Source: Phyllobates terribilis (lineage: Eukaryota). Taken from it: 64,000 nt of DNA. Location: positions 379,378,001 to 379,442,000 of the forward strand of contig NW_027362761.1 in assembly GCF_046119375.1 (NCBI RefSeq), read 5' to 3'. Below are positions 2,660 to 61,686 of the stretch, in pieces; positions within the stretch are counted from its first letter, which is position 1; each line of letters starts with the position of its first letter. Below the pieces are notes generated by a model that was given only the letters and a program-made list of their open reading frames with translations, was not told the origin of the DNA and made no database searches. The position numbers and the translations under genes were made by a program.

Positions 2660-4219
<1,560 letters not shown>

Positions 4220-4789
4220 TATAACATGACCAGGCAACCATCTGTTTGTCAGGATCAGCCACTTGGTAGAATAAACTAATTTTTAAAGCAGTAATGTGAA
4301 TATAACATTGTTTTATCTTTGTTACATTGAAAATATAACAATTGACAAGTAGATAAACTAATAATATATATAAAATGAGCACCGGTGGTCTAATGTTTTA
4401 CTTCACATCATTAACCATAACACATGCCATAAATTCATTCTCTGACAAGCTAAAACATCAATTTCAGGCTTATGCACCTTGGATACACTGTACAATAAAC
4501 CAACATTTAAGCTGAGGTCAGCTTGAAGCTGTACACGGTCTCTTTGTTACAATGATCTGCTATGCCAATCACTATGATCCATTCAGTGTAATGCAAATAA
4601 TGAGCTCAACTGCGTAGTAGTACACAGCCAACGTGAAAATTTTTTGAGGAATTCTAACAATATGTTCTCATAGTGTAATTGTAATAAATTTTTGGCTTCA
4701 ATCTGTGATCCTGTACTGTTGGTAGAGGGAAGGCAAAACACCCAATTTGAGATAGTTTCCAAATGTTTATGGCTTCCAACAAGCCTACA

Positions 4790-5013
4790 ACCTGCAGTAA
4801 ACACCACTGCACGACCAGCTCTACCCTCACCTAATGTATCCTCACCTATCCCTTCTACAATGTGAGCCCTCGCGGGCAGGGTCCTCGCTCCTCCTGTACC
4901 AGTCGCTGACTTGTTTTGTTAAGATTATGTAAATGCTTTTGTTATGTATATCCCTATCACATGTAAAGCGCCATGGAATAAATGGCGCTATAATAATAAT
5001 AATAATAATAATA
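4790..5013 (+). mobile_element. 3' end of L2/CR1-like retroposon with (ATA)n tail
   Basis: TGTAAAGCGCCATGG...ATGGCGCTAT followed by (AAT)n, a typical L2-type 3' terminus. The left boundary is approximate. Confidence 0.55.
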
Positions 5014-6954
5014 AATGGCAATGACAATAGACCACGAAGGAGAACCCATCAGCATGAGCTTTGTAACGTAAAGACATGGCTGTAATGATGCTGTAATGCT
5101 GGTTAAATTGATACCTTTGATGAGGAAATCCACTTTATTTGTTCTTCTTTAATCACCATTTGACGTTTTCTACTAATTATATTTCGATGCACAGAGGCCG
5201 GACTGTACACTGTCTTCTCCTCCCTTTCTGTGATTCCCTGGCCCCTCTGCTGCCGGCGGTATGTGAATGACCTGCCTCCTCTGTTTAAAATCTCAGCAGT
5301 GACCTGTCATTCAAAGACTGGAGGTAGGCGGAGGGGTGGGGAGAAGCCGCCAAGGACCCGCCTGTATGACTAGTCTCCTGTGCAGCTCAATCCCTGGCAG
5401 CTTTTAAAATGGTGTTTTTCTCTGAAACGCCGCAGCATTATAGAGACAAACATACATAGCTGTGATCGTATAGCCAGTGGCTGATACATGCTGCCCATGG
5501 TTTGGGCACCATGTATCAGCTGTCAGGTTCCCCTTAAACATAATCTTACTACACACTGTAAAGTACATTAGGGAAAAAATCTACAGTCCAGTAACAAGAA
5601 AGTGAGTGGTTTACAGATAACTTCTGACATATGGCTCAACTGAAAGGGGTTTTCTGGGATATATTTATTTTTTATTAAGAGATTATATAACAAAAAGTAA
5701 GAGGGTTTCTTATTTAAAGTTGTTGTTTTTTTAATTCCCTTTATGAAACGGCTAGATAGAGAATGTAATCCCACTTTAAATAAATGCTCTTTTCTTGGAA
5801 CTTTACCCAGTAATAGTGACAGATATAAATTTATAAGCCACAAATAAAGTTCTGTTTTAATTATAGGAAACTAGTGTCACATACAGGTTGAGTAAGGCTG
5901 GTTTCCTGTAATTATAGCAGAATTCCAATAACCTAGCCCCTGTAGACACGAAGACTGCCCCACAGATATTGACATCCCCATCTCTTACTGTTGTAAACAA
6001 TGGCCTTTGTTGGGAGGCAATTACTGTCTTCCCACACTGTGAAGTGGAGTCAACATTTGTCCATTGTCTCATTCTGTTGGCAAAAACGGACAATATGTCT
6101 GATTCCTTACTTTAATTAGAATAATGCAATGCTTCACACAAAGGCTACATACTTGTTACTAGCACATGTTTTATCCTGGCGGTAATACCCAGAATTCTCA
6201 GAGACCAATCACAAAGTTGTAAAATCAAGTCACTTGTTTCATTTACAGTATATGGACGTGGACAAGAGCATTTCTCATCTTCCATTGTGCAGACTGGGGC
6301 CACAAACAAACTCATCTGAATGTATCTAACTACTGTACATTCTGAATGCAAGAAGTTCATTAAATAATATATATTTTAGATATGTCTTAGGCTAAGTTCA
6401 CATGTCCAATTCTTCAATTGGAAGAAAAAGAGATGACCATGTAATTGATCTATTACTGTTACCCATAGACTTCAGTGTAAAAAGGACAAGGATCCTGTTG
6501 CAATCCGAAAAAAGTTGTGTCTGCAAAACTTTATTGTGCGGCTAAGATAACTGAATTAAAGCTGGTGATACAGATACTTCAAATACAGTTGGAAATTATT
6601 TCTAGATAAAGGGGAGTAAGCCAGCAACATGTCTAGGAGGAAAAAATATTATAAAAGCAAAAAAATTATTAAATCATTTTAAAAACACAGCAGAAAAGAA
6701 GTTATCCCAGGAAATAGTTTATGCGCTTTGAACAACAAGATTCTTCATCATAGCATGTATAATCTACATCCCGAGATAACTTCCTGTTTTTCTATCATGT
6801 TTTTAAAATGATTTAATAAATTTGTTGTTTTTATAATATTTTTTTACACCTGTTGCTGGATAACTCACCTCTTTCTGTATTCCTCTGTTGGTCACCGGTA
6901 TACAGCTTTAATCAGTGAACCACCCAAGGATTATGTTTGCTGATTTTATATACG

Positions 6955-6956
6955 TG

Positions 6957-7006
<50 letters not shown>
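6955..7006. repeat. (TA)n microsatellite, the target site of the adjacent Tc1
   Basis: Direct read of the TA run abutting CACTGCTC at 7007. Confidence 0.95.
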
Positions 7007-7009
<3 letters not shown>

Positions 7010-7316
7010 TGCTCAAAAAAATAAAAGGAACACTCAAATAACACATCCTAGATCTGAATGAATGAAATATTCTCATTGAATACTTTGTTCTGTACAAAGT
7101 TGAATTTGCTGATGTAGCACCCCGAGGGCTCGGCTGCTACAGGGGTATTGCACCTCAAACCAGAGGTGTGGTATTCCACTCCCGGGTAAGGATGGAGTGT
7201 GGACCAGGACTCATTTAGCTGCATGCACCACACACACCACATTTCCGAGGGACAGGTCAACGGTGCTCCCACTAGACAGAAGTGCAGGCACGACAGCATC
7301 TGTCCCTGGCTGGAGT

Positions 7317-7434
7317 GGGGCGGGGGGTGGAATACCCAGTGGTGTAGGAGCAGATAGGGGTGGGTTTCTGGGCATAGGTAGGAGCCCATTGGTTGCTAGT
7401 CACCTGGGCTCGGGTGTCAGAAGGAGGTATATAA
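7317..7434 (+). promoter_or_regulatory. LTR U3 promoter (GC box, inverted CCAAT, TATA)
   Basis: GGGGCGGGG at ~7317, ATTGG at 7388-7392, TATATAA at 7428-7434. Repeated in the 3' LTR; copy 2 has TATAAGA (53271). Confidence 0.55.
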
Positions 7435-8416
7435 GGTGGGCACCATCTTAGGACAGGAGTCAGTTCAGTTCAGAGAGGAGTTCAGCCAGAGAGTGCTGAC
7501 AGAGAGCTGTGGCTCAGTCTGGGCCCAGCTCCAGAGGCAGGCCTGGAGTGGAGGCCAGAAACAGCAGAAAGAGAGAGGAGAAGGAACGGAAAGGAAAGTA
7601 AGAAAGGAACTGGAAAAGAGGAGAAAGGAAGCAAGGAACACAGAGAAAGGCCCAGAGACACGAGGACAGAAGGAACCCCATATGCCCAGGAGATACAGGG
7701 TGAAGGGTTGGCAGAGCAGGGTACCGGAACCCAAATTGGTGGAGGCGACTAATCCTCAGCCAAAACCGGAGGTTGTGACCACATCTTGATGCGACCCCTC
7801 ACTACATCCACCAGGAAAGCATACCACATAGGGTCAGGGAAACCGGAGAGAGGTTTCGCCAACAGAAGGCCCGAGGAAGCTGGACAAAGGTGGGTCACTG
7901 GTGGGGACGGCCAGAGAAAGGAAAGGAAGGGAGCCCTGTGCCACACTCTGGAATTGCCTGGGAGTTGGTCGAGCCCCTTGCCTGGTGAACGCAGCACGGC
8001 TCAGGCGGTCCTTCATGTGCACAAGTGACCTGGATGAGAACTGTGAGTAAAGCATTGGAAACTGCACCACACGTCTCTGTGTTTCATCGCCGCACCAGCA
8101 CCATTAGTACTGGGACGCTCACACCATCACTACCATCATCTACTCTAGCTGCCCTGAGGCAATACTCCTCCCGTGGGGAGTTATCCCATTCTTGGCTGCG
8201 CATATAACATCAGCCCCAGTGGTCTGCAGCGCAGCGGCGGTCCCCACTGACCGCAATCAACTTTTGGCGTAGTCGGACCATTACAATACAAATAGACTGC
8301 CACTGAATTGACCACCCTGGGCACGGACCGGGTCAGCGCCACTGAGACTACATCCCACCAGAGGCCTGGTTCCGGGTATCCCCTGCACAACACAGGCCCA
8401 TGGGGCGCGTCAACTT

Positions 8417-8434
8417 TGGCGTAGTCGGCAGGAT
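8417..8434 (+). promoter_or_regulatory. Primer-binding site complementary to the 3' end of tRNA-Ser
   Basis: TGGCGTAGTCGGCAGGAT is the reverse complement of ATCCTGCCGACTACGCCA, the 3' 18 nt of vertebrate tRNA-Ser(AGA/TGA type, recalled sequence). It lies 4 nt downstream of the LTR. Copy 2 (50595-50612) has one C>T. Confidence 0.85.
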
Positions 8435-8643
8435 CTTTACCAACCCGCCACAAGCGGGTATTGCGTGCCTGAAGAAGATCGTACATGTACCTTGAAAAGA
8501 AGTCTCCCGCCATTTCCAGAAGTTTCCCGCCGTTCGGAGTCGTTTCCCGCCATCCGGAGCCGATTCCCGCCATCAGACGCCATTTTGGACCGTTTCCCGC
8601 CATCTTCATCCGTTTTTCCCGCCCTGGCAGAGCGGACGCCATT

Positions 8644-10266
8644 ATGTGCGCACCAAAGGACAGCAGGAAGCCGCCTCCCATCGTGGGCCAGGTCCCAGAG
8701 TGGCGCCAAAGGAGGGGCCCGCCCCCAGCAACAATGAGTGCAGCAATGGAGATGTCCATCAATGTGGGGGGGGGCTGCCCCTAAAGGTGATTGTCAGCAG
8801 ATGCCCCCAAGACCACCCCCCATGGGGGCGGATAGGAAAGAAAACTGTGGGGCCGGGCGCGGCCTGGATCAGTCTGGACCTGCTGCACCCGGAGATGGAG
8901 GGAGCAGAAAACTCCACCAGCACCCTGGCCCGCAGCCTGCTGCAAGCTGAGCCACCCTGCAGCCTGACAGAGTTGCTAGCCCAGCTGCCCAGGGACCCGG
9001 ACAGTGCACGCGCAGCGCTGGAAGACCTGAACAGGAGGATGGTCCGGGCGCAGCGGGATGTGTTTGCCGGGTGGAGAGAGGAGATGGCCCGGCAGCACGA
9101 AGGCAGAAAGCGGAGGACCCCGCCGGGACCGGGCAGCGCGCTTACCACTGGGCGCGGAGAAGAGGGACCGGCAGCTGCAGACGACGCCGCGGAGGAGGCC
9201 ACGGAGACCGAGGCAAGTAATGGGGACGCCACCACCCCAAGCCCTGGGAACACCAGCCTGCCCTCACCCTCCACTGCGGGACCCGAAGCCCCGGGGACCG
9301 TACCTGACATCATGCCTCCACCGCCGCCAGCTAGGCCTCAGGCTGCAAACGTCACTGTCACGCCCCGCCCTGCGCTGTGCCCTCTGAACCCGGGCGCCGT
9401 AAAGCGGGAGACGTCACAGGCCGGGACCCAAGACCCAGCACACCCGGGCGCCACTGCCTCACCAGCGCCCCCTACCTTGGCGGTGCCACCCCCGGGCGCG
9501 ACCAACGGCCTGGTCGCAAGGCCGAGTGCCCCCGGGCGCTGCCACCCGTCCAAAGCCCGCGGTGCCACCCCTGGGTGCGGACCTGTACGCCCAACATACC
9601 AGCCCAGACGGGCTGCCCTTTGAGTGGCCACCGGAGCTTGTCAACCCCCGTCTCCGGAAAGAACAACCCCTGAGCGAGCCTCTGATCCCGGCCCCGGAGC
9701 CTGCCAACATCGCTGCACCCCCGCCGGAGGAATCCCAGTTTTCATGGGACCCCACCGGCGAGAATCTCATGGGGTTCACCCAGGAGATCCGGGCGGAAGC
9801 AGCCCGGCGCCTGGATTGCTGCCGTCAGCAGCTGGCCACCTTTGAAAGGGAGCGACGGCAGAGGCGCATCAGGGAGGAGCGACTCCAGGCCAGGAGCGCG
9901 GAACAGAAGAGGAGGGCCCGACAAGACGCCCACGCCATCCGCGGTCCCAGAGCCACCGGGACCGTAGTCAAGTTCCAGCTGGAGCACGGCTGGGGCTTCA
10001 TCAGAGACCCGGAGGCTGACACCGACGTCTTTGTCACCAGAAGGGACGTAGAGGGCCACCTGCCGGAGGGACATCACGGCCGTGACCTGTACCCCGGTGA
10101 CGTGGTCACCTACACCCGGCACAAGGGCGCAAAGGGACTGTATGCCCTCCATGTCCACCGTCTAACAGAGGAGGAGCTGCGGTACCGCCCAGACATGGAC
10201 TACCCTGAGTGCCCGGATGGGTCTGAAGGCTATGAGGAAGGAGCATCAGGAGGACACCGTTATTGA
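8644..10266 (+). pseudogene. CSD-protein ORF of copy 1, two frameshifts (~543 aa reconstructed)
   Basis: Pieces 8485/8644-8770, 8646-9623 and 9526-10266. Relative to copy 2 it has +2 G in the G-run at ~8766-8774 and an 11-nt deletion at ~9508. The C-terminal TGTVVKFQLEHGWGFIRDPEADTDVFVTRRDV...LYPGDVVTYTRHKGAKGLYALHV aligns to the CspA/Y-box cold-shock domain (RNP1 GWGFI, RNP2 DVFV). Confidence 0.85.
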
Positions 10267-10854
10267 ATAAACGGTAAAATTAACTGTAAATAGTTACCCG
10301 TCAGGGTATCAGAATTGTAGATGAAACTGTTGACTGTGTGAACGTTACCTGTGTGCCCCTAATCCCTAACCAGGCTGAGGACTGTGAGCAGCCACTCCCT
10401 TATCCCCACTGGCCGAGGACTGAGAGCGGCCACCCTTGTAAATAGTTGCGCTTCTTAAAGCGCCCCCTACTGATTTTATACAAGAACTGCAACGTCTACC
10501 TCAGGACGAATTAAATGGACTGTTGCACCTTTTCCTGGTCGCAAGTTGCACAGCGGCCAGAGTTCAAGAATCTGCTTGAAAATGTTTTACTTGAAAATGT
10601 TTTTGTTTAAGAATGTCTTATACTGAAAAAGTTTCATATGCTGCTAAAGGAGTTTATAGTATTCTATATGTGTGTGAAGAAAGTCTTATAATGTTTTACG
10701 ATGTTTATACCAGTAACGTTTAAAAGGAAAAGAGTACCTCCCATAAAGGGATGGGTTAATTGTTGAATGTCTTATATGCGAATGCATTCTAAAAATTTGT
10801 ATGTTTTCAAATTGTTTTGTTCTCTTCCAGCCCGAGGACGTGCTGTGATTTACC

Positions 10855-10863
10855 AGGGGGGAA
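10855..10863 (+). promoter_or_regulatory. Polypurine tract
   Basis: AGGGGGGAA directly before the TG of the 3' LTR, preceded by CCCGAGGACG as often seen at gypsy 3' ends. Identical in copy 2 (52949-52957). Confidence 0.85.
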
Positions 10864-12319
10864 TGTAGCACCCCGAGGGCTCGGCTGCTACAGGGGTATT
10901 GCACCTCAAACCAGAGGTGTGGTATTCCACTCCCGGGTAAGGATGGAGTGTGGACCAGGACTCGTTTAGCTGCATGCACCACACACACCCCATTTCCGAG
11001 GGACAGGTCAACGGTGCTCCCACTAGACAGGAGTGCAGGCACGACAGCATCTGTCCCTGGCTGGAGTGGGGCGGGGGGTGGAATACCCAGTGGTGTAGGA
11101 GCAGATAGGGGTGGGTTTCTGGGCATAGGTAGGAGCCCATTGGTTGCTAGTCACCTGGGCTCGGGTGTCAGAAGGAGGTATATAAGGTGGGCACCATCTT
11201 AGGACAGGAGTCAGTTCAGTTCAGAGAGGAGTTCAGCCAGAGAGGGCTGACAGGGAGCTGTGGCTCAGTCTGGGCCCAGCTCCAGAGGCAGGCCTGGAGT
11301 GGAGGCCAGAAACAGCAGAAAGAGAGAGGAGAAGGAACGGAAAGGAAAGTAAGAAAGGAACTGGAAAAGAGGAGAAAGGAAGCAAGGAACACAGAGAAAG
11401 GCCCAGAGACACGAGGACAGAAGGAACCCCATATGCCCAGGAGATACAGGGTGAAGGGTTGGCAGAGCAGGGTACCGGAACCCAAATTGGTGGAGGCGAC
11501 TAATCCTCAGCCAAAACCGGAGGTTGTGACCACATCTTGGTGCGACCCCTCGCTACATCCACCAGGAAAGCATACCACATAGGGTCAGGGAAACCGGAGA
11601 GAGGTTTCGCCAACAGAAGGCCCGAGGAAGCTGGACAAAGGTGGGTCACTGGTGGGGACGGCCAGAGAAAGGAAAGGAAGGGAGCCCTGTGCCACGCTCT
11701 GGAATTGCCTGGGAGTTGGTCGAGCCCCTTGCCTGGTGAACGCAGCATGGCTCAGGCGGTCCTTCATGTGCACAAGTGACCTGGATGAGAACTGTGAGTA
11801 AAGCATTGGAAACTGCACCACACGTCTCTGTGTTTCATCGCCGCACCAGCACCATTAGTACTGGGACGCTCACACCATCACTACCATCATCTGCTCTAGC
11901 TGCCCTGAGGCAATACTCCTCCTGTGGTGAGTTATCCCATTCTTGGCTGCGCATATAACATCAGCCACAGTGGTCTGCAGCGCAGCGGCGGTCCCCACTG
12001 ACCGCAATCCACGGGTGGCGTAGTTGGACCATTACAATACAAATAGACTGCCACTGAATTGACCACCCTGGGCACAGACTGGGTCAGCGCCACTGAGACT
12101 ACATCCCACCAGAGGCCCGGTTCCGGGTATCCCCTGCACAACACAGGCACAGGGGGCGCGTCACTGACAACAAAATCACACAAAAATCATCAATGGAAAT
12201 CAAATTTATTAACCAAAGGAGGCCTGGATTTGGAGTCACTCCCAAAATTAAAGTGGAAAAACACACTACAGGCAGATCCAACTTTGATGTAATGTCCTTA
12301 AAAGAAGTCAAAATGAGGC

Positions 12320-13345
12320 TCAGTATTGTGTGTGGCCTCCATGTGCCTGTATGACCTCCCTACAATACCTGGGCATGCTCCTGATGAGGTTGCGGATGGT
12401 CTCCTGTGGGATCTCCTCCCAGACCTGGACTAAAGCATCCGCCAACTCCTGGACAGTCTGTGGTGCAACGTGACATTGGTGGCTGAAGCGAGACATGATG
12501 TCCCCTATGTGCTCAATCGGATTCAGGTCTGGGGAACGGGCGGGCCTGTCCATAGCTTCAATGCCTTCATCTTGCAGGAACTGCTGACACACTCCAGCCA
12601 CATGAGGTCTGGCATTGTCCTGCATTAGGAGGAACCCAGGTCCAACTGCACCAGCATATGGTCTCACAAGGGGTCTGAGGAGCTCATCTCTGTACCTAAT
12701 GGCAATCAGGCTACCTCTGGCAAGCACATGGAGGGCTGTGTGGCCCTCCAAAGAAATGCCACCCCACACCATTACTGACCCACTGCCAAACCGGTCATGC
12801 TGAAGGATGTTGCAGGCAGCAGATCGCTCTCCATGGCGTCTCCAGACTCTGTCACGTCTGTCACATGTGCTCAGTGTGAACCTGCTTTCATCTGTGAAGA
12901 GCACAGTGCGCCAGTGGCGATTTTGCCAATCCTGGTGTTCTGTGGCAAATGCCAAGCGTCCTGCACGGTGTTGGGCTGTGAGCACAACCCCCATCTGTGG
13001 ACGTCTGGCCCTTATACCACCCTCATGGAGTCGGTTTCTAACCATTTGTGCAGACACATGCACATTTGTGGCCTGCTGGAGATCATTTTGCAGGGCTCTG
13101 GCAGTGCTTCTCCTATTTCTCCTTGCACAAAGGCGGAGGTAGCAGTCCTGCTGCTGAGTTGTTGCCCTCCTACTGCCCCCTCCACGTCTCCTGGTGTACT
13201 GGCCTGTCTCCTGGTAGCGCCTCCAGCCTCTGGACACTACGCTGACAGACACATAAAACCTTCTTGCCAGTGCTCGCATTGATGTGCCATCCTGGATGAG
13301 CTGCACTACCTGAGCAACTTCTGTGGGTTGTAGAGTCCGTCTCAT
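12320..13345 (-). CDS. Tc1 transposase, open 341-aa frame with two conserved Trp substituted
   Basis: ATG at 13345 ([12 protein letters not shown]). HTH region, TDESRF, QDNARPH and SPDLNPIE with 34 residues between D2 and E. WPARS>RPARS and HIWD>HIGD compared with the sibling copy at 60.5 kb. Confidence 0.85.
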
Positions 13346-13616
13346 GCTACCACGAGCGTGAAAGCACAACCAACATTCAGAAGTGACCAAAACATCAGCC
13401 AAAAAGCATTGGTACTGAGATGTGGTCTGTGGTCCCCACCTGCAGAACCACTCCTTTATTGAGTGTGTCTTGATAATTGCCAATAATTTCCATCTATTGT
13501 CTATTCCATTTGCACAACAGCATGTGAAATTGATTGTCAATCAGTGTTGCTTCCTAAGTGGACAGTTATATTCTGTTGTTTAAGTGTTCCATTTATTTTT
13601 TTGAGCAGTGTATATA

Positions 13617-13815: not shown

Positions 13816-15463
13816 TTGGTAAAGAATGGTATTACACCAGTTATATACATCCTGCCGAAGATTCATAAAACTTTGGTGAACCCTCCGGGACGTCCCATTA
13901 TCTCAGGCAGTGATTACATTTTCAGTCGAATAGGTATATTTTTGGATAGAGTTCTAGGTCCATTGGCTAGAAACACTGCTTCCTTTTTACAAGATACAAA
14001 TGATTTCTTATGCAAGTTACAGGAGGTTCCAATGATTAATGAACCTATATTGTTGGTATCATTTGATGTGGTATCATTATATACCTCAATTAAACACGAG
14101 AGGGGTCTTATTGCTGTAAGAAGGAAACTTGATTTTACAAACTTTAAGCCTTAAAGTATTGGTTTCTTCATGGAGTTATTGGAGATGGTACTTACTAATA
14201 ACTATTTTATGTTTGGTGATGAGTATTACATGCAACGACGCGGGACTGCGATGGGTGCCAATATGGCACCCGCTTATGCAAATTAAATGATGGCCATGTT
14301 GGAGGAGTAGCTTGTCTATGTGGCGCCGCTTTTTTCACTGGTGTTGAGATGGTGGCGCTACATAGATGACATCTTCCTCCTGTGGAAAGGCATTGAGCAA
14401 GAGTTGTTGAATTTTTTTTACTTTATCAATACTATTGACAGTGATATCAAGTTTTCATTGGTCTACTTGGCACAGGAAATCCAGTTTTTGGATGTTCTTG
14501 TTAGTTATAGGGAAGGTAGATTTTGCACTACTCTATATTCGAAACCGACGGATAAAAACAACATTCTAAAATTTGAAAGTAATCATCCTGGAAAGATGGT
14601 AAACTCTCTTCCATTTAGTCAGTTTTTGCGAACTAAAAGAATTGTAAGTGATGATAATAATTTAAAACAAAATCTTGAAAAAATGAGGATGAAATTTTTG
14701 GTCAGGGATTATCCGAAATATTTACTTGACAAGGGGATTAATATGGTAAATAATCTTGAACGTGAATCTCTTTTAAAATCTAAGAGGAGCATAGATAAGG
14801 TGTCTAATAGAATACCAGTTATTACCACATTTTATGAGGAGAGTGACTCTATCGCTAGAATAATTAGGAAACACTGGAGCATGTTGCGTAAATGCAATTT
14901 CAGAATCCTCCGTTGTTCTCGTATAAACGAGCAAGGAAGTTGAAAGATAAATTGGTGAGAGCTGATGTGGGACCTCAAAAAGGTATGAAGCAAATAACAT
15001 TAACAGGTAATAAAAGAACAGGATCTTACCCTTGCTTGAATTGTGTAAACTGTCCAAATTTGATTAAGGGGAGTTTTTTTCTACATCCAATTACAAATGA
15101 GAAATTTGTTATCAAACATTATTTGACATGCGACTCGGGATACGTCATATATCTTCTATACTGTCCTTGTAAATTGATGTATGTGGGGGAGACAACATGG
15201 GATTTGATAACCTGTTTGAACCACCACAGATATACTATACGCAAAAACAGATTGGATTTGCCAGTCTCTAAATATTTTACTGAAGCCGGACACAATGAAA
15301 AACAATTAAAATTTAGGATCATTGATCACGTGCCCCCCTGAGGAGGGGAGGTGATCGGGTTAAAATGCTTAAGATTAAAGAATTACAATGGATAAGGAAA
15401 TTAGACACATTACGTCCTAAAGGACTAAATGTGGATTTCAAAATTGAATTGGCATCTCTTTGA
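13816..15463 (+). pseudogene. Penelope-like retroelement (Neptune-type) RT plus GIY-YIG endonuclease, 5'-truncated and decayed
   Basis: Motifs [42 protein letters not shown], a Cys linker CLNCVNCP and YVIYLLYCPCKLMYVGET. In-frame stops at ~14152, 14285 and 14308 and a frameshift near 14900. AT-rich 3' region probably extends to ~16740. Confidence 0.9.
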
Positions 15464-34276: not shown

Positions 34277-40812
<6,536 letters not shown>

Positions 40813-46441: not shown

Positions 46442-48077
46442 CAGTGGTGGTCAAAAGTATTGGCACCCCTGCAATTCTGTCAGATAATACTCAGTTTCTT
46501 CCTGAAAATGATTGCAATCACAAATTCTTTGGTATTACTATCTTCATTTAATTTGTCTTCAATGAAAAAACACAAAAAGAATTGTCCTAAAGCGAAATTG
46601 GATATAATTCCACACCAAACCTAAAAAAGGGGGTGGACAAAAGTATTTGCACTATTTGAAAAATCATGTGATGCTTCTCTAATTCGTGTAATTAACAGCA
46701 CCTGTAACTTACCTGTGGCACCTAACAGGTGTTGGCATTAACTAAATCACACTTGCAGCCAGTTAACATGGGTTAAAGTTGACTCAACCTCTGTCCTGTG
46801 TCCTTGTGTGTACCACATTGAGCATGGAGAAAAGAAAGAAGACCAAAGAACTGTCTGAGGACTTGAGAAACCAAATTGTGAGGAAGCATGAGCAATCTCA
46901 AGGCTACAAGTCCATCTCCAAAGACCTGAATGTTCCTGTGTCTTCCGTGCGCAGTGTCATCAAGAAGTTTAAAGCCCATGGCACTGTGGCTAACCTCCCT
47001 AGATGTGGACGGAAAAGAAAAATTGACGAGAGATTTCAACGCAAGATTGTGCGGATGGTGGATAAAGAACATCGACTAACATCCAAACAAGTTCAAGCTG
47101 CCCTGCAGTCCGAGGGTACAGCAGTGCCAACCCGTACTATCCGTCGGCGTCTGAATGAAAAGGGACTGTATGGTAGGATACCCAGGAAGACCCCACTTCT
47201 TACCCCGAGACATAAAAAAGCCAGGCTGGAGTTTGCCAAAACTTACCTGAGAAAGCCTAAAACGTTTTGGAAGAATGTTCTCTGGTCAGATGAGACAAAA
47301 GTAGAGCTTTTTGGGAAAAAGCATCAACATAGAGTGTACAGGAAAAAAAAAGAGGCATTCAAAGAAAAGAACACGGTCCCTACAGTCAAACATGGCGGAG
47401 GTTCCCTGATGTTTTGGGGTTGATTTGCTGCCTCTGGCACTGGACTGCTTGACCGTCTGCATGGCATTATGAAGTCTGAAGACTACCAACAAATTTTGCA
47501 GCATAATGTAGGGCCCAGTGTGCGAAAGCTGGGTCTCCCTCAGAGGTCATGGGTCTTCCAGCAGGACAATGACCCAAAACACACTTCCAAAAGCACTATA
47601 AAATGGTTTGAGAGAAAGCACTGGAGACTTCTAAGGTGGCCAGCAATGAGTCCAGACCTGAATCCCATAGAACACCTGTGGAGAGATCTCAAAATGGCAG
47701 TTTGGAGAAGGCACCCTTCAAATATCAGGGACCTGGAGCAGTTTGCCAAAGAAGAATGGTCTACAATTCCAGTAGAGCATTGTAAGAAACTCATTGATGG
47801 TTACCGGAAGCGGTTGTTCGCAGTTATTTTGGCTAAAGGTTGTGCAGCCAAGTATTAGGTTGAGGGTGCCAATACTTTTGTCTGGCCCATTTTTGGAGTT
47901 TTGTGTGAAATGATCAATGATTTGATTTTTGCTTCATTCTCTTTTGTGTTTTTTCCTTGCAAGCAAATTAAATGAAGATAATAAGACCAAAGAATTTGTG
48001 ATTGCAATCATTTTCAGGAAGAAACTAAGTGTTATCTGACAGAATTGCAGGGTTGCCAATACTTTTGGCCACCACTG
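46442..48077 (+). mobile_element. Young full-length Tc1 (long-TIR type)
   Basis: TA|CAGTGGTGGTCAAAAGTATTGGCA ... TGCCAATACTTTTGGCCACCACTG|TA, with ~200-bp imperfect TIRs. Confidence 0.95.
46824..47858 (+). pseudogene. Tc1 DD34E transposase with a single premature stop
   Basis: ORFs 46779-47423 and 47469-47858 are in the same frame. The only lesion seen is TGA at 47421-47423 in MFWG*FAASG, where Cys is expected. SDETK, QDNDPKH and SPDLNPIE are intact. Confidence 0.9.
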
Positions 48078-49210: not shown

Positions 49211-49291
49211 TGAGTCATACAATTAATATATTTTTTTATTATTTTGTTAATATTATTAATATTGAGCAGAATTAATTTCAGCCTATTGATT

Positions 49292-52200
49292 TGTAGCACC
49301 CCGAGGGCTCGGCTGCTACAGGGGTATTGCACCTCAAACCAGAGGTGCGATATTCCACTCCCGGGTAAGGATGGAGTGTGGACCAGGACTCGGTTAGCTG
49401 CATGCACCACACACACCCCATTTCCGAGGGGCAGCTCAACGGTGCTCCCACTAGACAGAAGTGCAGGCACGACAGCATCTGTCCCTGGCTGGAGTGGGGA
49501 GGGGAAGGAAAACCCAGTGGTGTAGGAGCAGATAGGGGTGGGTCTCTGGGCATAGGTAGGAGCCCATTGGTTGCTAGTCACCTGGGCTCACACATAGAGG
49601 GAGGTATAAGAGGTGGGCACCATCTTAGAGTGAGTTCAGTTCTGTGAGAGAAGGAGTTCAGCCAGAGAGTGCTGACAGGGAGCTGTGGCTCAGTCTGGGC
49701 CCAGCTCCAGAGGCAGGCCTGGAGTGGAGGCCAGAAACAGCAGAAAGAGAGAGGAGAAGGAACCGAAAGGAAAGTAAGAAAGGAACTGGAACAGAGGAGA
49801 AAGGAAACAAGGAACACAGAGAAAGGCCCAGAGACACGAGGACAGAAGGAACCCCATATGCCCAGGAGATACAGGGTGAAGGGTTGGCAGAGCAGGGTAC
49901 CGGAACCCAAATTGGTGGAGGCGACAAATCCTCAGCCAAAACCGGAGGTTATGACCACATCTTGGTGCGACCCCTCACTACATCCACCAGGAAAGCATAC
50001 CACATAGGGTCAGGGAAACCGGAGAGAGGTTTCGCCAACAGAAGGCCCGAGGAAGCTGGACAAAGGTGGGTCACTGGTGGGGACGGCCAGAGAAAGGAAA
50101 GGAAGGGAGCCCTGTGCCACGCTCTGGAATTGCCTGGGAGTTGGTCGAGCCCCTTGCCTTGTGAACGCAGCACGGCTCAGGCGGTCCTTCATGTGCACAA
50201 GTGACCTGGATGAGAACTGTGAGTAAAGCATTGGAAACTGCACCACACATCTCTGTGTTTCATCGCCGCACCAGCACCATTAGTACTGGGACGCTCACAC
50301 CCTCACTACCATCATCTACTCTAGCTGCCCTGAGGCAATACTTCTCCCGTGGGGAGTTATCCCATACTCGGCTGCGCAAACAACATCAGCCTCAGCGGTC
50401 TGCAGCGCAGTGGCGGTCCCCATTGACCGCAATCCACGGGTGGCGTAGTCGGACATTGTTTTTACCTAAAACTGCCACTGGTTTGACCGCCCTGGGCACG
50501 GACCGGGTCACCGCCACACGGAGACTACAACCCCCCAGCGATCCGGCTCCGGGTATCCCCTGCACAACACAGGCCCAGGGGGCGCGTCAAATTTTGGCGT
50601 AGTCGGTAGGATCTTTTCCAACCCGCCACAAGCGGGTATTGCGTGCCTGAAGAAGATTGTGCATGTACCTTGAAAAGAAGTCTCCCGCCATTTCCAGAAG
50701 TTTCCCGCCGTCCGGAGCCAATTCCTGCCATCAGACGTCATTTTGGACCGTTTCCCGCCATCTTCATCCGTTTTTCCCGCCCTGGCAGAGTGGACGCCAT
50801 TATGTGCGCACCAAAGGACAGCAGGAAGCCGCCTCCCATCGTGGGCCAGGTCCCAGAGTGGCGCCAAAGGAGGGGCCCGCCCCCAGCAACGATGAGTGCA
50901 GCAATGGAGATATCCATCAACGTGGGGGGGCTGCCCCTAAAGGTGATTGTCAGCAGATGCCCCCAAGACCACCCCCCATGGGGGTGGATAGGAAAGAAAA
51001 CTGTGGGGCCGGGCGCGGCCTGGATGAGCCTGGGCCTGCTGCACCCGGAGATGGAGGGAGCAGAGAACTCCACCAGCACCCTGGCCCGCAGCCTGCTGCA
51101 AGCTGAGCCACCCTGCAGCCTGACAGAGTTGCTAGCCCAGCTGGCCCAGGGACCCGGACTGTGCGCGCGCAGCGCTACAAGACCTGAACAGAAGGATGGT
51201 CCGGGCGCAGCAGGAAGTGTTTGCCGGGTGGAGAGAGGAGTTGGCCCGGCAGCACGAAGATAGCCAGCGGAGGACCCCGCCGTCACCGGGCAGCGCGCTT
51301 ACCGCTGGGCGCGGAGAAAAGGGACCGGCAGCTGCAGACGACGCCGCGGAGGAGGCCACGGAGACCGAGACAGGTAATGGGGACGCCACCACCCCAAGCC
51401 CTGGGAACACCAGCCTGCCCTCACCCTCCACTGCGGGACCCGAAGACCCGGGGACCGTACCTGACATCATGCCTCCACCGCCGCCAGCTAGGCCTCAGGC
51501 TGCAAACGTCACTGTCACGCCCCGCCCCGCGCTGTGCCCTCTGAACCCGGGCTCTGTAAAGCGGGAGACATCACAGGCCGGGACGCAAGACCCAGCACAC
51601 CCGGGCGCCGCTGCCTCACCAGCGCCCCCTACCTTGGCGGTGCCACCCCCGGGCGCGACCAACAAGCGACCACCGGCCTGGTCGCAAGGCCGAGTGCCCC
51701 CAGGCTCTGCCACCCGTCCGAAGCTCGCGGTGCCACCCCTGGGTGCGGACCTGTACGCCCAATATACCAGCCCGGACGGGCTGCCCTTTGAGTGGCCACC
51801 GGAGTTTGTCAACCCCCGTCTCCGGAAAGAACAACCCCTGAGCGAGCCTCTGATCCCGGCCCCGGAGCCTGCCAACATCGCTCCACCCCCGCCGGAGGAT
51901 GCCCAGTTTGCATGGGACCCCACCGGCGAGAATCTCATGGGGTTCACCCAGGAGACCCGGGCGGAAGCAGCCCAGCGCCTGGATTGCTGCCGTCAGCAGC
52001 TGGCCACCTTTGAAAGGGAGCGACGGCAGAGGCGCATCAGGGAGGAGCGACTCCAAGCCCGGAGCGCAGAGCAGAAGAGGAGGGCCAGACAAAACCCCCA
52101 AGCCATCCGCGGTCCCCGAGCCACCAGGACCGTAGTAAAATTCCAGCTAGAGCATGGCTGGGGCTTCATCAGAGACCCGGAGGCTGACACCGACGTCTTC

Positions 52201-54255
52201 GTCACTAGAAGGGACGTTGAAAGCCACCTGCCAGAGGGACATCACGGACGTGACCTGTACCCCGGTGACGTGGTCACCTACACCCGGCACAAGGGCGCAA
52301 AGGGACTGTACGCCCTCCATGTCCACCGTCTAACGGAGGAGGAACTGCGGTACCGCCCAGACATGGACTACTCTGAGGGTCCGGACGGACCTGAAGACTA
52401 CCCGGAAGAGCGAGGAGGACACCGTTACTAATGAACGGTAAATGGAACTGTATATAGTTACCCGTAAGGGTATAGAAACTGTTGCTGAGTGGAGTGTGGT
52501 CCCTGTTGGGACTGGTATAGAACTGTGTAGAAGTTACCCCCTATATCCCTTATCTGGCTGGGGACTGAGAACAGCCATCCCTTTTTCCTAATCTGACTGG
52601 TGACTGAGAGCAGCCATTCCCCTAAGAAGAAAGAACACCTGGTCGCAAGTTGCACCGCGGCCAGAACTCAAGAATGTGTTTTAAAAAAAAAAAAAAAAAA
52701 AAAATGTTTTACTTAAGAATGTCTTATACTGAAAAAGTTTCATATGCTGCTAAAAGAGTTTATAGCATTTTATATGTGTGTGAAGAAAGTCTTGTAATGT
52801 TTTATACCAGTAACGTTAAAAGGAAAGAGTACCTCCCATAAAGGGATGAGTAAATAGTTAATGTCTTATATGTGAATGCATTCTAAAATTTTTGTATGCT
52901 TTAAATTGTTTTGCTCTTTTCAAGCCCGAGGACGTGCTGTGATTTACCAGGGGGGAATGTAGCACCCCGAGGGCTCGGCTGCTACAGGGGTATTGCACCT
53001 CAAACCAGAGGTGTGATATTCCACTCCCGGGTAAGGATGGAGTGTGGACCAGGACTCGGTTAGCTGCATGCACCACACACACCCCATTTCTGAGGGACAG
53101 CTCAACGGTGCTCCCACTAGACAGAAGTGCAGGCACGACAGCATCTGTCCCTGGCTGGAGTGGGGAGGGGAAGGAAAACCCAGTGGTGTAGGAGCAGATA
53201 GGGGTGGGTCTCTGGGCATAGGTAGGAGCCCATTGGTTGCTAGTCACCTGGGCTCACACATAGAGGGAGGTATAAGAGGTGGGCACCATCTTAGAGTGAG
53301 TTCAGTTCTGTGAGAGAAGGAGTTCAGCCAGAGAGTGCTGACAGGGAGCTGTGGCTCAGTCTGGGCCCAGCTCCAGAGGCAGGCCTGGAGTGGAGGCCAG
53401 AAACAGCAGAAAGAGAGAGGAGAAGGAACGGAAAGGAAAGTAAGAAAGGAACTGGAACAGAGGAGAAAGGAAGCAAGGAACACAGAGAAAGGCCCAGAGA
53501 CACGAGGACAGAAGGAACCCCATATTCCCAGGAGATACAGGGTGAAGGGTTGGCAGAGCAGAGTACCGGAACCCAAATTGGTGGAGGCGACTAATCCTCA
53601 GCCAAAACCGGAGGTTGTGACCACATCTTGGTGTGACCCCTCACTACATCCACCAGGAAAGCATACCACATAGGGTCAGGGAAACCGGAGAGAGGCTTCG
53701 CCAACAGAAGGCCCGAGGAAGCTGGACAAAGGTGGGTCACTGGTGGGGACGGCCAGAGAAAGGAAAGGAAGGGAGCCCTGTGCCACGCTCTGGAATTGCC
53801 TGGGAGTTGGTCGAGCCCCTTGCCTGGTGAACGCAGCATGGCTCAGGCAGTCCTTCATGTGCACAAGTGACCTGGATGAGAACTGTGAGTAAAGCATTGG
53901 AAACTGCACTACACGTCTCTGTGTTTCATCGCCGCACCAGCACCATTAGTACTGGGACGCTCACACCCTCACTACCATCATCTACTCTAGCTGCCCTGAG
54001 GCAATACTTCTCCCGTGGGGAGTTATCCCATACTCGGCTGCACAAACAACATCAGCCTCAGCGGTCGGCAGCGCAGCGGCGGTCCCCACTGACCGCAATC
54101 CACGGGTGGCGTAGTCGGACATTGTTATTACCTAAGACTGCCACTGGTTTGACCGCCCTGGGCACGGACCGGGTCACCGCCACACGGAGACTACAACCCC
54201 CCAGCGATCCGGCTCCGGGTATCCCCTGCACAACACAGGCCCAGGGGGCGCGTCA
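49292..54255 (+). mobile_element. Non-autonomous LTR retroelement carrying a cold-shock-domain ORF, copy 2
   Basis: LTRs 49292-50589 and 52958-54255 (1298 bp each, about 22 differences by eye). TSD GATT at 49288-49291 and 54256-54259. PBS 50595-50612, PPT 52949-52957. Lies in SUSD2 intron 5 in sense orientation. Confidence 0.93.
50802..52431 (+). pseudogene. CSD-protein ORF of copy 2, one +1 frameshift (~542 aa reconstructed; 411-aa C-terminal frame open)
   Basis: The frame runs from ATG 50802 through MEISINVGGLPLKV to an extra G at ~51143 (CTGGCCC vs CTGCCC in copy 1). The 51196-52431 frame includes coiled-coil-like, Pro-rich and CSD segments. Confidence 0.85.
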
Positions 54256-54753
54256 GATTCACCTTCCACAACAGTCATGGTCTCTCATGTGGCCCCTTGA
54301 GGAAATTAATCTCCTACCGCTGCTCTACTATATATAGCGCTATGTTATGTATAGGGCTGTGTACATAATGGAAAAAAATTTCCATAATTTTCCGTCTACA
54401 GATGTCACCAAAGCATCTGTGTTAGTCACATGACCTATCACATGATCTATCAAAGGGGATCATGTGACATGTCACGTGATACATCGGGTACCTGTGGGGG
54501 GGCTCACACCTTCTAAACTGCCCGGGGCCCTGGCTACTCTTAATCCACCCCTGGTCATGACAATGCCTTTTTATAGGCTAAAGCCTCTTCTTTTTGCCAA
54601 AAAACCTTGGTTTATGATATATTATTTTATAAAGCAGAGCTAAAGTTGACTTTTTATGAGCAGCATTTTCTGTAAAAAGAATACATTTTATATTTAGTTA
54701 TTAAAGTTATTCGTATGATAATCTCAATAATTATGTATTACCCTGTGTCACAG

Positions 54754-57820: not shown

Positions 57821-57893
<73 letters not shown>
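57821..57893. repeat. (TA)n microsatellite
   Basis: Direct read. Confidence 0.97.
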
Positions 57894-57898
<5 letters not shown>

Positions 57899-60330: not shown

Positions 60331-60540
60331 GGCCCCATACATAAGAAAAAAAAAATCAAATACTCACCTCACTTCTTACCTGATGCTGATCCGGACTCCA
60401 GCATCGCCCGCGTCTTCCCGCTGTGACAGCTCAGGAGAGATCGCTCACGGTGTAAACATATCACCGCGCCCTCTGACCTGAGACGTCACAGTCAGAAGAC
60501 GCTGCGGAGGCACGGGGAGGGGTAAGTATTGTGCCGGCGC

Positions 60541-61686
60541 CGTCATCATGTCCCAGATGTGCTCAATCGGATTCAGTTCTGGGGAACGGGCGGGCCAGTC
60601 CATAGCTTCAATGCTTTCGTCTTGCAGGAACTGCTGACACACTCCAGTCACATGAAGTCTGGCATTGTCCTGCATTAGGAGGAACCCAGGGCCAACCGCA
60701 CCAGCATATGGTCTCACAAGAGGTCTGAGGATCTCATCTCGGTATCTAATGGCAGTCAGGCTACCTCTAGCGAGCACATGGAGGGCTGTGCGGCCCTCCA
60801 AAGAAATGCCACCCCACACCATTACTGACCCACTGCCAAACCGGTCATGCTGAAGGATGTTGCAGGCAGCAGGTCGCACTCCATAGCGTCTCCAGACTCT
60901 GTCACATGTGCTCAGTGTGAAGCTGCTTTCATCTGTGAAGAACACAGGGCGCCAGTGGCGACTTTGCCAATCCTGGCGTTCTGTGGCAAATGCCAAGCGT
61001 CCTGCACGGTGTTGGGCTGTGAGCACAACCTCCATCTGTGGATGTTGGGCTCTCATACCACCCTCATGGAGTTGGTTTCTAACCGTTTGTGCAGACATAT
61101 GCACATTTGTGGCCTGCTGAAGGTATGTTTTTTGCAGGGCTCTGGCAGTGCTCCTCCTGTTCCTCCTTGCACAAAGGCGGAGGTAGCAGTCCTGCTGCTG
61201 GGTTGTTGCCCTCCTATGGCCCCCTCCATGCCTCCTGTTGTACTGGCCTGTCTCCTGGTAGCGCCTCCAGCCTCTGGACACTACGCTGACAGACACAGCA
61301 AACCTTCTTGCCATAGCTCGCATTGATGTGCCATCCTGGATGAGCTGCACTACCTGAGCAACTTCTGTGGGTTGTAGAGTCCGTCTCATGCTACCGCGAG
61401 TGTGAAAGCACAACCAACATTCAAAAGTGACCCAAACATCAGCCAGAACGCATTGGTACTGAGATGTGGTCTGTGGTCCCCACCTGCAGAACCACTCCTT
61501 TATTGAGTGTGTCTTGATAATTGCCAATAATTTCCATCTATTGTCTATTCCATTTGCACAACAGCATGTGAAATTGATTGTCAATCAGTGTTGCTTCCTA
61601 AGTGAACACTTTGATTTCACAGAAGTTTGATTTACTTGGAGTTATATTCTGTTGTTTAAGTGTTCCCTTTATTTTTTTGTGCAGTG
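60541..61686 (-). mobile_element. Tc1, sibling of 7007-13610, truncated on the transposase C-terminal side
   Basis: Same [12 protein letters not shown] transposase ([24 protein letters not shown]) with small indels. End ...GTGCAGTG|TA at 61686. Confidence 0.88.

What the first reader, a model, noticed from the sequence alone, without database searches (positions are those of the whole stretch)
7113..12163. LTR retroelement family whose only cargo is a cold-shock-domain protein (second copy 49292-54255)
Seen in sequence: two separate insertions, each with all cis-signals of an integrated LTR retroelement (1.3-kb TG..CA LTRs ~98% identical, 4-bp TSDs CTGA and GATT, tRNA-Ser PBS, PPT). The ~2.4-kb interior has no capsid, zinc knuckle, protease, RT, RNase H or integrase. 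It holds one GC-rich ORF: N-terminal region, helical segment (ARAALEDLNRRMVRAQ), Pro/Ala/Thr linker, Arg/Glu-rich helix, cold-shock domain and short acidic tail. Established: CSDs (CspA, YBX1/FRGY2, Lin28) are single-stranded RNA/DNA-binding chaperones; frog FRGY2 masks oocyte mRNA; single-ORF non-autonomous LTR elements such as zebrafish bhikhari/crestin exist. I do not recall a CSD being described as such cargo. Inference: the element borrows Gag-Pol from a gypsy/ERV helper and uses its own CSD protein to protect, chaperone or help package its RNA, or to interfere with host Y-box/Lin28 regulation in the germline.
Basis: partly seen in the sequence, partly recalled or inferred. Interest (0 to 1): 0.93.

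Follow-up and report, generated by a model that had tools for sequence, protein, structure and literature searches.

The report
Frog LTR retrotransposon carrying only a cold-shock protein
Two dead copies of a frog jumping-gene family lack the usual retrovirus-like genes and carry one conserved gene for an RNA-binding protein with a cold-shock domain, probably borrowed from a host Y-box gene. The family occurs in several frog families and seems not to have been described.

Summary
The window has two independent insertions of one LTR element, at 7113-12163 and 49292-54255. Each has 1.3-kb TG..CA LTRs about 98.2% identical, a 4-bp target duplication (CTGA, GATT), an 18-nt primer-binding site matching tRNA-Ser, and a short polypurine tract.

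The 2.4-kb interior has no gag or pol signal. Its single ORF ends in a cold-shock domain (CSD), which scores above the Pfam cut-off. The model has pLDDT 86.6 and target-normalised TM 0.86-0.88 to CspA.

Six more LTR-flanked, pol-less CSD elements came from Phyllobates, Ranitomeya, Anomaloglossus and Bufo. Some have 99.4-100% identical LTRs, and the Phyllobates ORF is uninterrupted. The CSD is under purifying selection (dN/dS 0.11-0.18) and scores closest to vertebrate Y-box proteins.

Most likely this is a non-autonomous LTR retrotransposon superfamily of hyloid frogs. Its own CSD protein probably binds its RNA, and pol comes from an unidentified helper. That mechanism is inferred, not shown.

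Novelty is moderate. CSD capture by pol-bearing bird ERVs was reported in 2025, and pol-less single-ORF LTR elements are known in Xenopus.

The parts
7109..7112 (+). Target-site duplication CTGA, left side of copy 1
   Evidence: Same 4 bases at 12164-12167
7113..8412 (+). 5' LTR of copy 1 (1300 bp, TG..CA)
   Evidence: 98.2% identical to 10864-12163 with no indels
8417..8434 (+). Primer-binding site of copy 1, complementary to the 3' end of tRNA-Ser
   Evidence: 18/18 match to the antisense tRNA-Ser template in PMC3299991. Conserved in copy 2 and in the Phyllobates copy
8644..10266 (+). Single ORF of copy 1, from the first ATG shared with the Phyllobates copy to the stop. Broken by 2 frameshifts. 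Layout: N-terminal helix, Pro/Ala/Thr-rich disordered part, Arg/Glu-rich helix, CSD, acidic tail
   Evidence: dN/dS 0.26 against copy 2 over the last 245 codons
9784..9927 (+). Arg/Glu-rich long helix just before the CSD (approximate bounds, transferred from the copy 2 model)
   Evidence: AlphaFold helix at residues 252-299 of the copy 2 piece, pLDDT 77-94. dN/dS 0.19 against Phyllobates for the region just upstream of the CSD, which contains this helix
9955..10158 (+). Cold-shock domain of copy 1
   Evidence: PF00313 35.0 bits against cut-off 27. Five-strand model with pLDDT 86.6. Foldseek target-normalised TM 0.86-0.88 to CspA and CspC
10855..10863 (+). Polypurine tract AGGGGGGAA of copy 1
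   Evidence: Abuts the 3' LTR. A conserved block GAGGACG lies just upstream in the window copies and in L001, L003, L004 and L006
10864..12163 (+). 3' LTR of copy 1
12164..12167 (+). Target-site duplication CTGA, right side of copy 1
49288..49291 (+). Target-site duplication GATT, left side of copy 2
49292..50589 (+). 5' LTR of copy 2
   Evidence: 98.3% identical to 52958-54255
50595..50612 (+). Primer-binding site of copy 2 (tRNA-Ser type, one mismatch)
50802..52431 (+). Single ORF of copy 2, from the first shared ATG to the stop. Broken by 1 frameshift
52129..52326 (+). Cold-shock domain of copy 2
   Evidence: PF00313 30.2 bits
52949..52957 (+). Polypurine tract of copy 2
52958..54255 (+). 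3' LTR of copy 2
54256..54259 (+). Target-site duplication GATT, right side of copy 2

Best explanation
These are two old, inactivated insertions of a non-autonomous LTR retrotransposon family from a superfamily spread through hyloid frogs (Dendrobatidae, Aromobatidae, Bufonidae).

Shown: the element keeps all the cis signals needed for reverse transcription and integration (LTRs, tRNA primer site, polypurine tract). It has no capsid, protease, reverse transcriptase or integrase. In the gag position it carries one ORF of about 540-620 aa. The only recognisable domain of that ORF is a Y-box-like cold-shock domain, preceded by an Arg/Glu-rich helix. The ORF is under purifying selection.

Inferred: the protein is made from the element's own transcript and binds that RNA through the CSD and the basic helix. 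This would resemble the way Y-box proteins coat mRNA, or the way LINE-1 ORF1p or a retroviral nucleocapsid binds its template. The resulting RNP would then be reverse-transcribed and integrated by Pol (and perhaps Gag) from an unidentified autonomous element, giving mostly 4-bp target duplications.

I put about 0.9 on the identity (a pol-less LTR family with a selected CSD ORF). I put about 0.45 on the CSD protein acting on the element's own RNA as a Gag/NC substitute.
For: Cis anatomy is confirmed in both copies.

Six further LTR-flanked elements each carry a CSD ORF in an original interior of 2.07-2.6 kb (L004 also holds a nested insertion):
- L001, Phyllobates terribilis: LTRs 100% identical, frame uninterrupted for 710 codons, 617 aa from the shared ATG.
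- L003 and L004, Anomaloglossus: LTRs 99.5% and 99.8% identical.
- L007, Ranitomeya variabilis: 99.7%.
- L008, Anomaloglossus: 99.4%.
- L006, Bufo bufo: 96.8%.

The CSD is supported by Pfam, by the fold model and by profile matches to solved structures.

Purifying selection:
- CSD dN/dS 0.11-0.18.
- Region just before the CSD 0.19.
- N-terminal part 0.63.
- Copy 1 against copy 2 0.26, Fisher p=2e-6.

Nucleotide similarity between lineages is limited to LTR-end or PPT-adjacent stretches and, in some pairs, the CSD.

The profile search of 1.84 billion proteins gave no pol-linked relative among the hits I examined. The N-terminal half matches no Pfam family, solved structure or database protein.
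Against: - There is no direct evidence of transcription, translation or RNA binding.
- Only two of the four base-stacking positions that I recall for Y-box CSDs are kept, the two Phe, which are invariant in the six sequences of A3. The Trp and His positions are replaced, so the nucleic-acid specificity may be changed or weakened.
- No helper was identified.
- The lineages use two different primer-binding sites, and one copy seems to have a 5-bp duplication. That may mean several helpers, or none of the kind I assume.
- I could not survey any frog genome, so autonomous CSD-bearing relatives cannot be excluded.
- Dfam and Repbase could not be consulted.
Confidence: 0.55

Rival explanations
1. 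These are deletion derivatives of an unseen autonomous retrovirus or LTR retrotransposon that itself carries a captured CSD, as reported for bird ERVs. In that case the CSD protein is an accessory or Gag-linked gene of the parent, and the short elements are its defective, trans-complemented offspring.
For: Bird ERVs of two major groups carry captured CSDs, acquired several times (PMC12287698). Defective proviruses that outnumber their parent are common (established knowledge).
Against: All eight LTR-flanked elements seen, from five named species plus the window, share the short pol-less layout despite deep divergence, two primer-site types and LTRs of 639-1300 bp. No pol-linked relative turned up among the 106 profile hits I examined. 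Neither observation is a genome survey.
Confidence: 0.2
2. The CSD protein acts on the host rather than on the element's own RNA. It might mimic or compete with Y-box or Lin28 proteins in oocytes and embryos, changing mRNA masking, translation or silencing in the element's favour.
For: The CSD scores closest to Y-box proteins: 41.7 bits against 33.6 for bacterial Csp, 23 for Lin28 and 21 for CARHSP1. A family-specific, invariant loop (H-L-x-x-G-H-x-x-R) and replaced stacking residues suggest a changed specificity. The Xenopus pol-less element Xretpos(L) is reported to have developmental activity (PMC4585706).
Against: No expression data are available. The protein lacks the long basic/acidic C-terminal domain of Y-box proteins. 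Selection on a multicopy element is explained most simply by a role in its own propagation.
Confidence: 0.12
3. The CSD ORF is passive cargo: a transduced piece of a host Y-box mRNA with no role for the element or the host.
For: LTR elements do pick up host sequences (established knowledge). Both window copies are broken.
Against: dN/dS is well below 1 both between species and between the two window copies. The CSD is retained in every lineage while the rest of the ORF and most of the LTR diverge beyond recognition.
Confidence: 0.05
4. This is a host-domesticated gene family of retroelement origin, like chicken ENS-1/ERNI, kept by selection on the host rather than on the element.
For: NCBI pipelines call several copies as genes, including 'Y-box-binding protein 2-A-like' in Bufo bufo. 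The Ranitomeya variabilis locus L002 has no clear 5' LTR.
Against: The insertions are multicopy and lineage-specific, with target duplications and near-identical LTRs. There are frameshifted copies in the window and a copy with a nested retroelement insertion. I have no evidence that any locus is orthologous between species.
Confidence: 0.08

Closest known systems
CSD-carrying endogenous retroviruses of birds (PMC12287698, 2025)
   Same: A retroelement with LTRs carries a captured host-type cold-shock domain (pfam00313). Capture happened repeatedly.
   Different: The bird elements were found through their RT and belong to the ERV-A/B or ERV-G groups, so they have pol, and the position of the CSD varies. 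The frog elements have no gag or pol at all and the CSD ORF is the sole gene.
Xenopus pol-less LTR elements 1a11, Xretpos(L) and lambda-olt 2-1 (PMC4585706)
   Same: Frog LTR elements with one ORF and no pol homology, at tens to hundreds of copies.
   Different: 1a11 is said to encode a Gag-like 71-kDa protein, and no CSD is reported for any of them. I recognised no Xenopus protein among the profile hits I looked up, but most of the 106 were not looked up by name.
Zebrafish bhikhari/crestin and chicken ENS-1/ERNI single-ORF LTR families
   Same: LTR-flanked families with one non-pol ORF. ENS-1 is described as a multigene family of retroviral origin under negative selection (PMC3362752).
   Different: Their ORFs are not reported to hold a CSD. 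ENS-1 is regarded as host-adopted.
Vertebrate Y-box proteins (YB-1, YBX2; FRGY2 in frogs)
   Same: They are the best-scoring solved CSDs against the family profile (E about 1e-9). The loop between strands 3 and 4 has nearly the same length. The RNP1-like G-[WY]-G-F-I and RNP2-like V-F-V motifs are kept.
   Different: The frog protein has no long alternating basic/acidic C-terminal domain. The Trp and His stacking positions are replaced. It has a family-specific conserved loop and sits inside an LTR element.
LINE-1 ORF1p and retroviral nucleocapsid (functional analogues, from established knowledge)
   Same: A retroelement-encoded protein that pairs a helical region, possibly for oligomerisation, with a single-strand nucleic-acid-binding domain, encoded upstream where gag or ORF1 sits.
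   Different: The fold differs (CSD rather than RRM or CCHC knuckle). There is no homology, and the activity is untested.

Membership tests
Integrated LTR retroelement | Two direct LTRs ending TG..CA, flanked by a short target-site duplication | tested here: met
Integrated LTR retroelement | Primer-binding site complementary to a tRNA 3' end next to the 5' LTR, and a polypurine tract next to the 3' LTR | tested here: met
   18/18 match to the antisense tRNA-Ser template in PMC3299991. AGGGGGGAA abuts the 3' LTR
Autonomous LTR retrotransposon or retrovirus | gag (capsid, CCHC nucleocapsid) and pol (protease, RT, RNase H, integrase) | tested here: not met
   No Pfam hit other than CSD in any interior ORF on either strand. 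No CCHC pattern. No similarity to solved structures in the N-terminal parts. The interior is only 2.4 kb
Cold-shock domain (PF00313) | Profile score above the curated cut-off | tested here: met
   35.0 and 30.2 bits against 27. Among relatives, 5 of 9 pass the cut-off and 4 fall just below it at 23.7-26.8 bits
Cold-shock domain (PF00313) | Five-stranded beta-barrel (OB) fold | tested here: met
   AlphaFold model with pLDDT 86.6 and five strands. Top Foldseek matches are cold-shock proteins: target-normalised TM 0.86-0.88, rmsd about 2 Å, probability 1.00
Cold-shock domain (PF00313) | RNP1 and RNP2 motifs with aromatic or His base-stacking residues | tested here: inconclusive
   G-[WY]-G-F-I and V-F-V are kept and both Phe are invariant. 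The positions aligned to the YB-1 Trp and His are replaced in all six members of alignment A3. Residue roles are from memory
Y-box protein family (YBX1-3) | Y-box-type CSD followed by a long C-terminal domain of alternating basic and acidic clusters | tested here: not met
   The CSD is closest to Y-box, but only about 35 residues follow it. The NCBI name 'Y-box-binding protein 2-A-like' for the Bufo copy reflects the CSD alone
CSD-carrying ERVs of birds | An ERV with RT that places it in a retroviral group, plus a captured CSD | tested here: not met
   No RT in the element. Homology of the CSDs is not testable because no bird sequences were at hand
Xenopus 1a11 / Xretpos(L) families | Sequence homology of the ORF or LTR | tested here: inconclusive
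   The profile search gave only hyloid-frog relatives and generic CSD proteins among the hits I looked up. The Xenopus records could not be fetched with these tools

The most novel reading that the evidence does not exclude
Frogs host a long-lived lineage of 'one-protein' LTR retrotransposons. These would have replaced Gag/NC with a domain taken from the host's own mRNA-packaging Y-box proteins, so the element packages or shields its RNA with a host-like coat while parasitising another element's Pol. Together with the repeated CSD captures in bird ERVs, that would make the cold-shock domain a recurrently recruited retroelement RNA-handling module.
Probability: 0.3. Interest if true: 0.8.

Novelty: new variant of a known kind. 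Interest (0 to 1): 0.6.

Why it matters
- It would add a new kind of protein to those retroelements use to handle their RNA, alongside CCHC nucleocapsid and the RRM of L1 ORF1p.
- It gives a clean case of a non-autonomous element that keeps exactly one gene under selection. That helps ask what a hitch-hiking retroelement minimally needs.
- It flags a source of annotation error. Copies are already called as host genes, including 'Y-box-binding protein 2-A-like' in Bufo bufo and a chimeric CSD-astacin model in Ranitomeya imitator.
- It bears on transposon expansion in the giant genomes of poison frogs.

Tried and rejected
- Gypsy element in the window (35363-40314, minus strand) as helper: rejected. 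Its 437-bp LTRs, primer-binding site and 5-bp duplication are unrelated.
- Hidden gag or pol: none in any interior ORF on either strand. No knuckle or conserved late-domain motif.
- Homologues of the N-terminal half: none in the word-indexed protein search, Pfam or solved structures.
- Full-length AlphaFold model: too poor to use beyond secondary structure (pLDDT 49.5), and its fold search was only weakly CSD-like.
- tRNA genes in the window or loci, to identify the second primer-site type: none found. A literature string search for that site also found nothing, so its tRNA is unassigned.
- Rfam on the element: only simple-repeat artefacts outside it.
- Viral and metagenome contig scans: no relatives. 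The viral fold library gave only phage and giant-virus Csp proteins.
- Exact look-up of the window ORF: not on record, so the source species stays unidentified. The best transposon match is to Phyllobates terribilis at 86%.
- Canonical poly(A) signals: none in the window LTRs and none conserved after the stop codon, so U3/R/U5 were not delimited.
- Segmental duplication: rejected.

Full report
**1. Observation**

Self-comparison of the window shows two LTR-bounded units.
- Copy 1 has LTRs at 7113-8412 and 10864-12163, with 23 mismatches in 1300 bp and no indels.
- Copy 2 has LTRs at 49292-50589 and 52958-54255, with 22 mismatches in 1298 bp.
- All LTRs begin TG and end CA. The flanking 4-bp duplications are CTGA for copy 1 and GATT for copy 2.
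- The copies are about 93% identical, and their similarity ends exactly at the LTR termini. They are therefore independent insertions, not a duplicated segment.

Four bases after the 5' LTR lies TGGCGTAGTCGGCAGGAT. A full-text search found this string at the start of an antisense human tRNA-Ser transcription template (PMC3299991), an 18/18 match. A short polypurine tract abuts each 3' LTR. The interior is much richer in G+C than the host DNA (62-72% against about 38-40%).

**2. Coding content**

The only sizeable sense-strand reading frame runs from the gag position to about 600 bp before the 3' LTR. It is not intact. Between the first ATG shared with the Phyllobates relative and the stop, copy 1 has two frameshifts and copy 2 has one. 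The copies differ by four indels whose length is not a multiple of three and one in-frame indel. I saw no separate nonsense codon. I searched the in-frame pieces separately and never joined them.

The C-terminal pieces hit Pfam CSD above the curated cut-off, at 35.0 and 30.2 bits against 27. Nothing else in the interior, on either strand, hits any Pfam family. There is no CCHC knuckle.

A model of the 84-residue CSD segment, built from an alignment of six family members, has pLDDT 86.6 and five strands. Its best structural matches are cold-shock proteins, with target-normalised TM 0.86-0.88 and rmsd about 2 Å.

The full-length model is poor (pLDDT 49.5). It still shows an N-terminal helix, a long disordered Pro/Ala/Thr-rich stretch, and a confident 48-residue Arg/Glu-rich helix directly before the CSD.

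**3. Relatives**

A profile search of 1.84 billion representative proteins returned only frog proteins as clear relatives, plus generic CSD proteins. The frog relatives are:
- Phyllobates terribilis: P0001.
- Ranitomeya variabilis: P0002, P0039, P0040.
- Ranitomeya imitator: P0004, P0103.
- Anomaloglossus baeobatrachus: P0003, P0005, P0067.
- Bufo bufo: P0057, which NCBI names 'Y-box-binding protein 2-A-like'.
- A few unnamed Logan and ENA contigs.

I fetched the loci and found LTR pairs around the CSD ORF in six of them.

| Locus | Species | LTR length | LTR identity | Target duplication | Primer-site type |
|---|---|---|---|---|---|
| L001 | P. terribilis | about 1.24 kb | 100% | ACAA | tRNA-Ser |
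| L003 | Anomaloglossus | 1284 bp | 99.5% | apparently 5 bp | second type |
| L004 | Anomaloglossus | 1150 bp | 99.8% | TAAA | second type |
| L007 | R. variabilis | 1174 bp | 99.7% | TATC | second type |
| L008 | Anomaloglossus | 639 bp | 99.4% | TAGT | tRNA-Ser |
| L006 | Bufo bufo | 1132 bp | 96.8% | unclear | second type, one mismatch |

- In L001 the frame is uninterrupted for 710 codons, or 617 aa from the shared ATG.
- L004 carries one nested insertion of a Penelope-like retroelement inside the ORF.
- Original interiors are 2.07-2.6 kb, too small for pol.
- L002 (R. variabilis) has only an LTR remnant downstream of the ORF.
- Between lineages, detectable nucleotide similarity is limited to LTR-end or PPT-adjacent stretches and, in some pairs, the CSD.

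**4. Selection and origin**

| Comparison | Region | dN/dS |
|---|---|---|
| Copy 2 vs Phyllobates | CSD | 0.17 |
| Copy 2 vs Phyllobates | 125 codons before the CSD | 0.19 |
| Copy 2 vs Phyllobates | N-terminal part | 0.63 |
| Copy 1 vs copy 2 | last 245 codons | 0.26 (Fisher p = 2e-6) |
| Copy 1 vs copy 2 | CSD | 0.11 |

So the protein, and the CSD above all, mattered while the family was spreading.

A profile of six family CSDs scores best against vertebrate Y-box proteins (41.7 bits). Bacterial Csp (33.6), Lin28 (23) and CARHSP1 (21) score lower, and the loop between strands 3 and 4 has nearly the Y-box length. I take this as moderate evidence for capture from a host Y-box gene.

The two Phe of the RNP motifs are invariant. 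The positions aligned to the YB-1 Trp and His are replaced. The family has its own invariant loop, H-L-x-x-G-H-x-x-R. The roles of those YB-1 residues are from my memory.

**5. Mechanism**

Shown:
- a complete set of cis signals;
- no gag or pol;
- one selected ORF with a helix followed by a Y-box-like CSD;
- very young copies in other species;
- two dead copies here.

Inferred:
- the protein binds the element's own RNA;
- reverse transcription and integration are supplied in trans.

The helper is unknown. The window's gypsy element does not share LTRs, primer-binding site or duplication length with this family. Two primer-site types within the superfamily hint at more than one helper, or at primer switching.

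From LTR divergence of about 1.7%, nearly half of it at CpG sites, the window insertions are probably a few million years old. This is rough because the frog substitution rate is unknown.

**6. Comparison with what is known**

Pol-less single-ORF LTR elements are known in Xenopus: 1a11, Xretpos(L) and lambda-olt 2-1 (PMC4585706). A retroviral-origin multigene family, ENS-1/ERNI, is known in chicken (PMC3362752).

Captured CSDs were reported in 46 bird ERVs from two major groups (PMC12287698).

No paper I found links a CSD to a non-autonomous LTR element or to frog transposons. Two poison-frog genome papers do not mention it. Dfam and Repbase could not be checked. I therefore rate it a new variant of a known kind.

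**7. Declared slips**

- It was never sent to a tool or used as evidence. The tRNA assignment rests on the printed template in PMC3299991.
- My first two notebook entries give the bounds of ORF pieces and of a nested insertion, which indirectly bracket breaks. My reasoning also touched on where one break lies.
- The consensus lines printed by the alignment tools were not used.

Noticed in passing
window 35363-40314 (minus strand): Ty3/gypsy element with 437-bp LTRs 94.3% identical and a 5-bp duplication TTAGA. It has Pfam hits for gag, protease, RT, RNase H and integrase, but the coding region is split into several ORF pieces. The best protein match is a Phyllobates terribilis protein at 86%, which suggests the window comes from a dendrobatid-like frog.
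   Followed up: partly
window 12320-13540 (-), 60445-61584 (-), 46779-47423 (+): Tc1/mariner transposase ORFs (HTH_Tnp_Tc3_2 plus DDE_3; one has a Sleeping Beauty-type HTH). The first lies about 150 bp downstream of copy 1.
   Followed up: partly
window 6947-7009 and 57821-57897: Self-complementary dinucleotide microsatellites. The sub-threshold Rfam mir-297 and mir-1277 hits there are simple-repeat artefacts.
   Followed up: yes
L004 (Anomaloglossus baeobatrachus), element 3586-13478: A CSD element carries one nested Penelope-like retroelement (RT plus a GIY-YIG-like end) inside its ORF. The insertion is flanked by a perfectly duplicated stretch of a few hundred bases.
   Followed up: partly
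L001 9164-11296 and L008 10001-11812: In two lineages the reading frame stays open from inside the 5' LTR, through the primer-binding site (read W-R-S-R-Q-D in both) and the leader, into the CSD ORF. This may be a by-product of high G+C, or a hint that translation starts further upstream.
   Followed up: no
window 8413-10266 compared with the LTRs: The interior has CpG observed/expected of about 0.7 and G+C of 62-72%. The LTRs have CpG o/e of 0.2-0.45 and the host DNA is about 38-40% G+C. Unexplained.
   Followed up: no
P0057 (Bufo bufo, L006) and P0103 (Ranitomeya imitator): Element ORFs have leaked into gene sets. One is named 'Y-box-binding protein 2-A-like'. Another model fuses the CSD to astacin and CUB exons.
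   Followed up: partly
L003, L004, L006, L007 just after the 5' LTR: A second primer-binding-site type (TGGCGTCACGAACAGGAT, one mismatch in Bufo) whose tRNA I could not assign. L003 also seems to have a 5-bp rather than a 4-bp duplication.
   Followed up: partly
L008 about 15042-15327: A fragment 83% identical to the 3' end of the L003-type LTR, with no nearby ORF of 120 aa or more that looks like a CSD or pol gene (by eye). It is likely a solo LTR or LTR remnant of the superfamily.
   Followed up: partly
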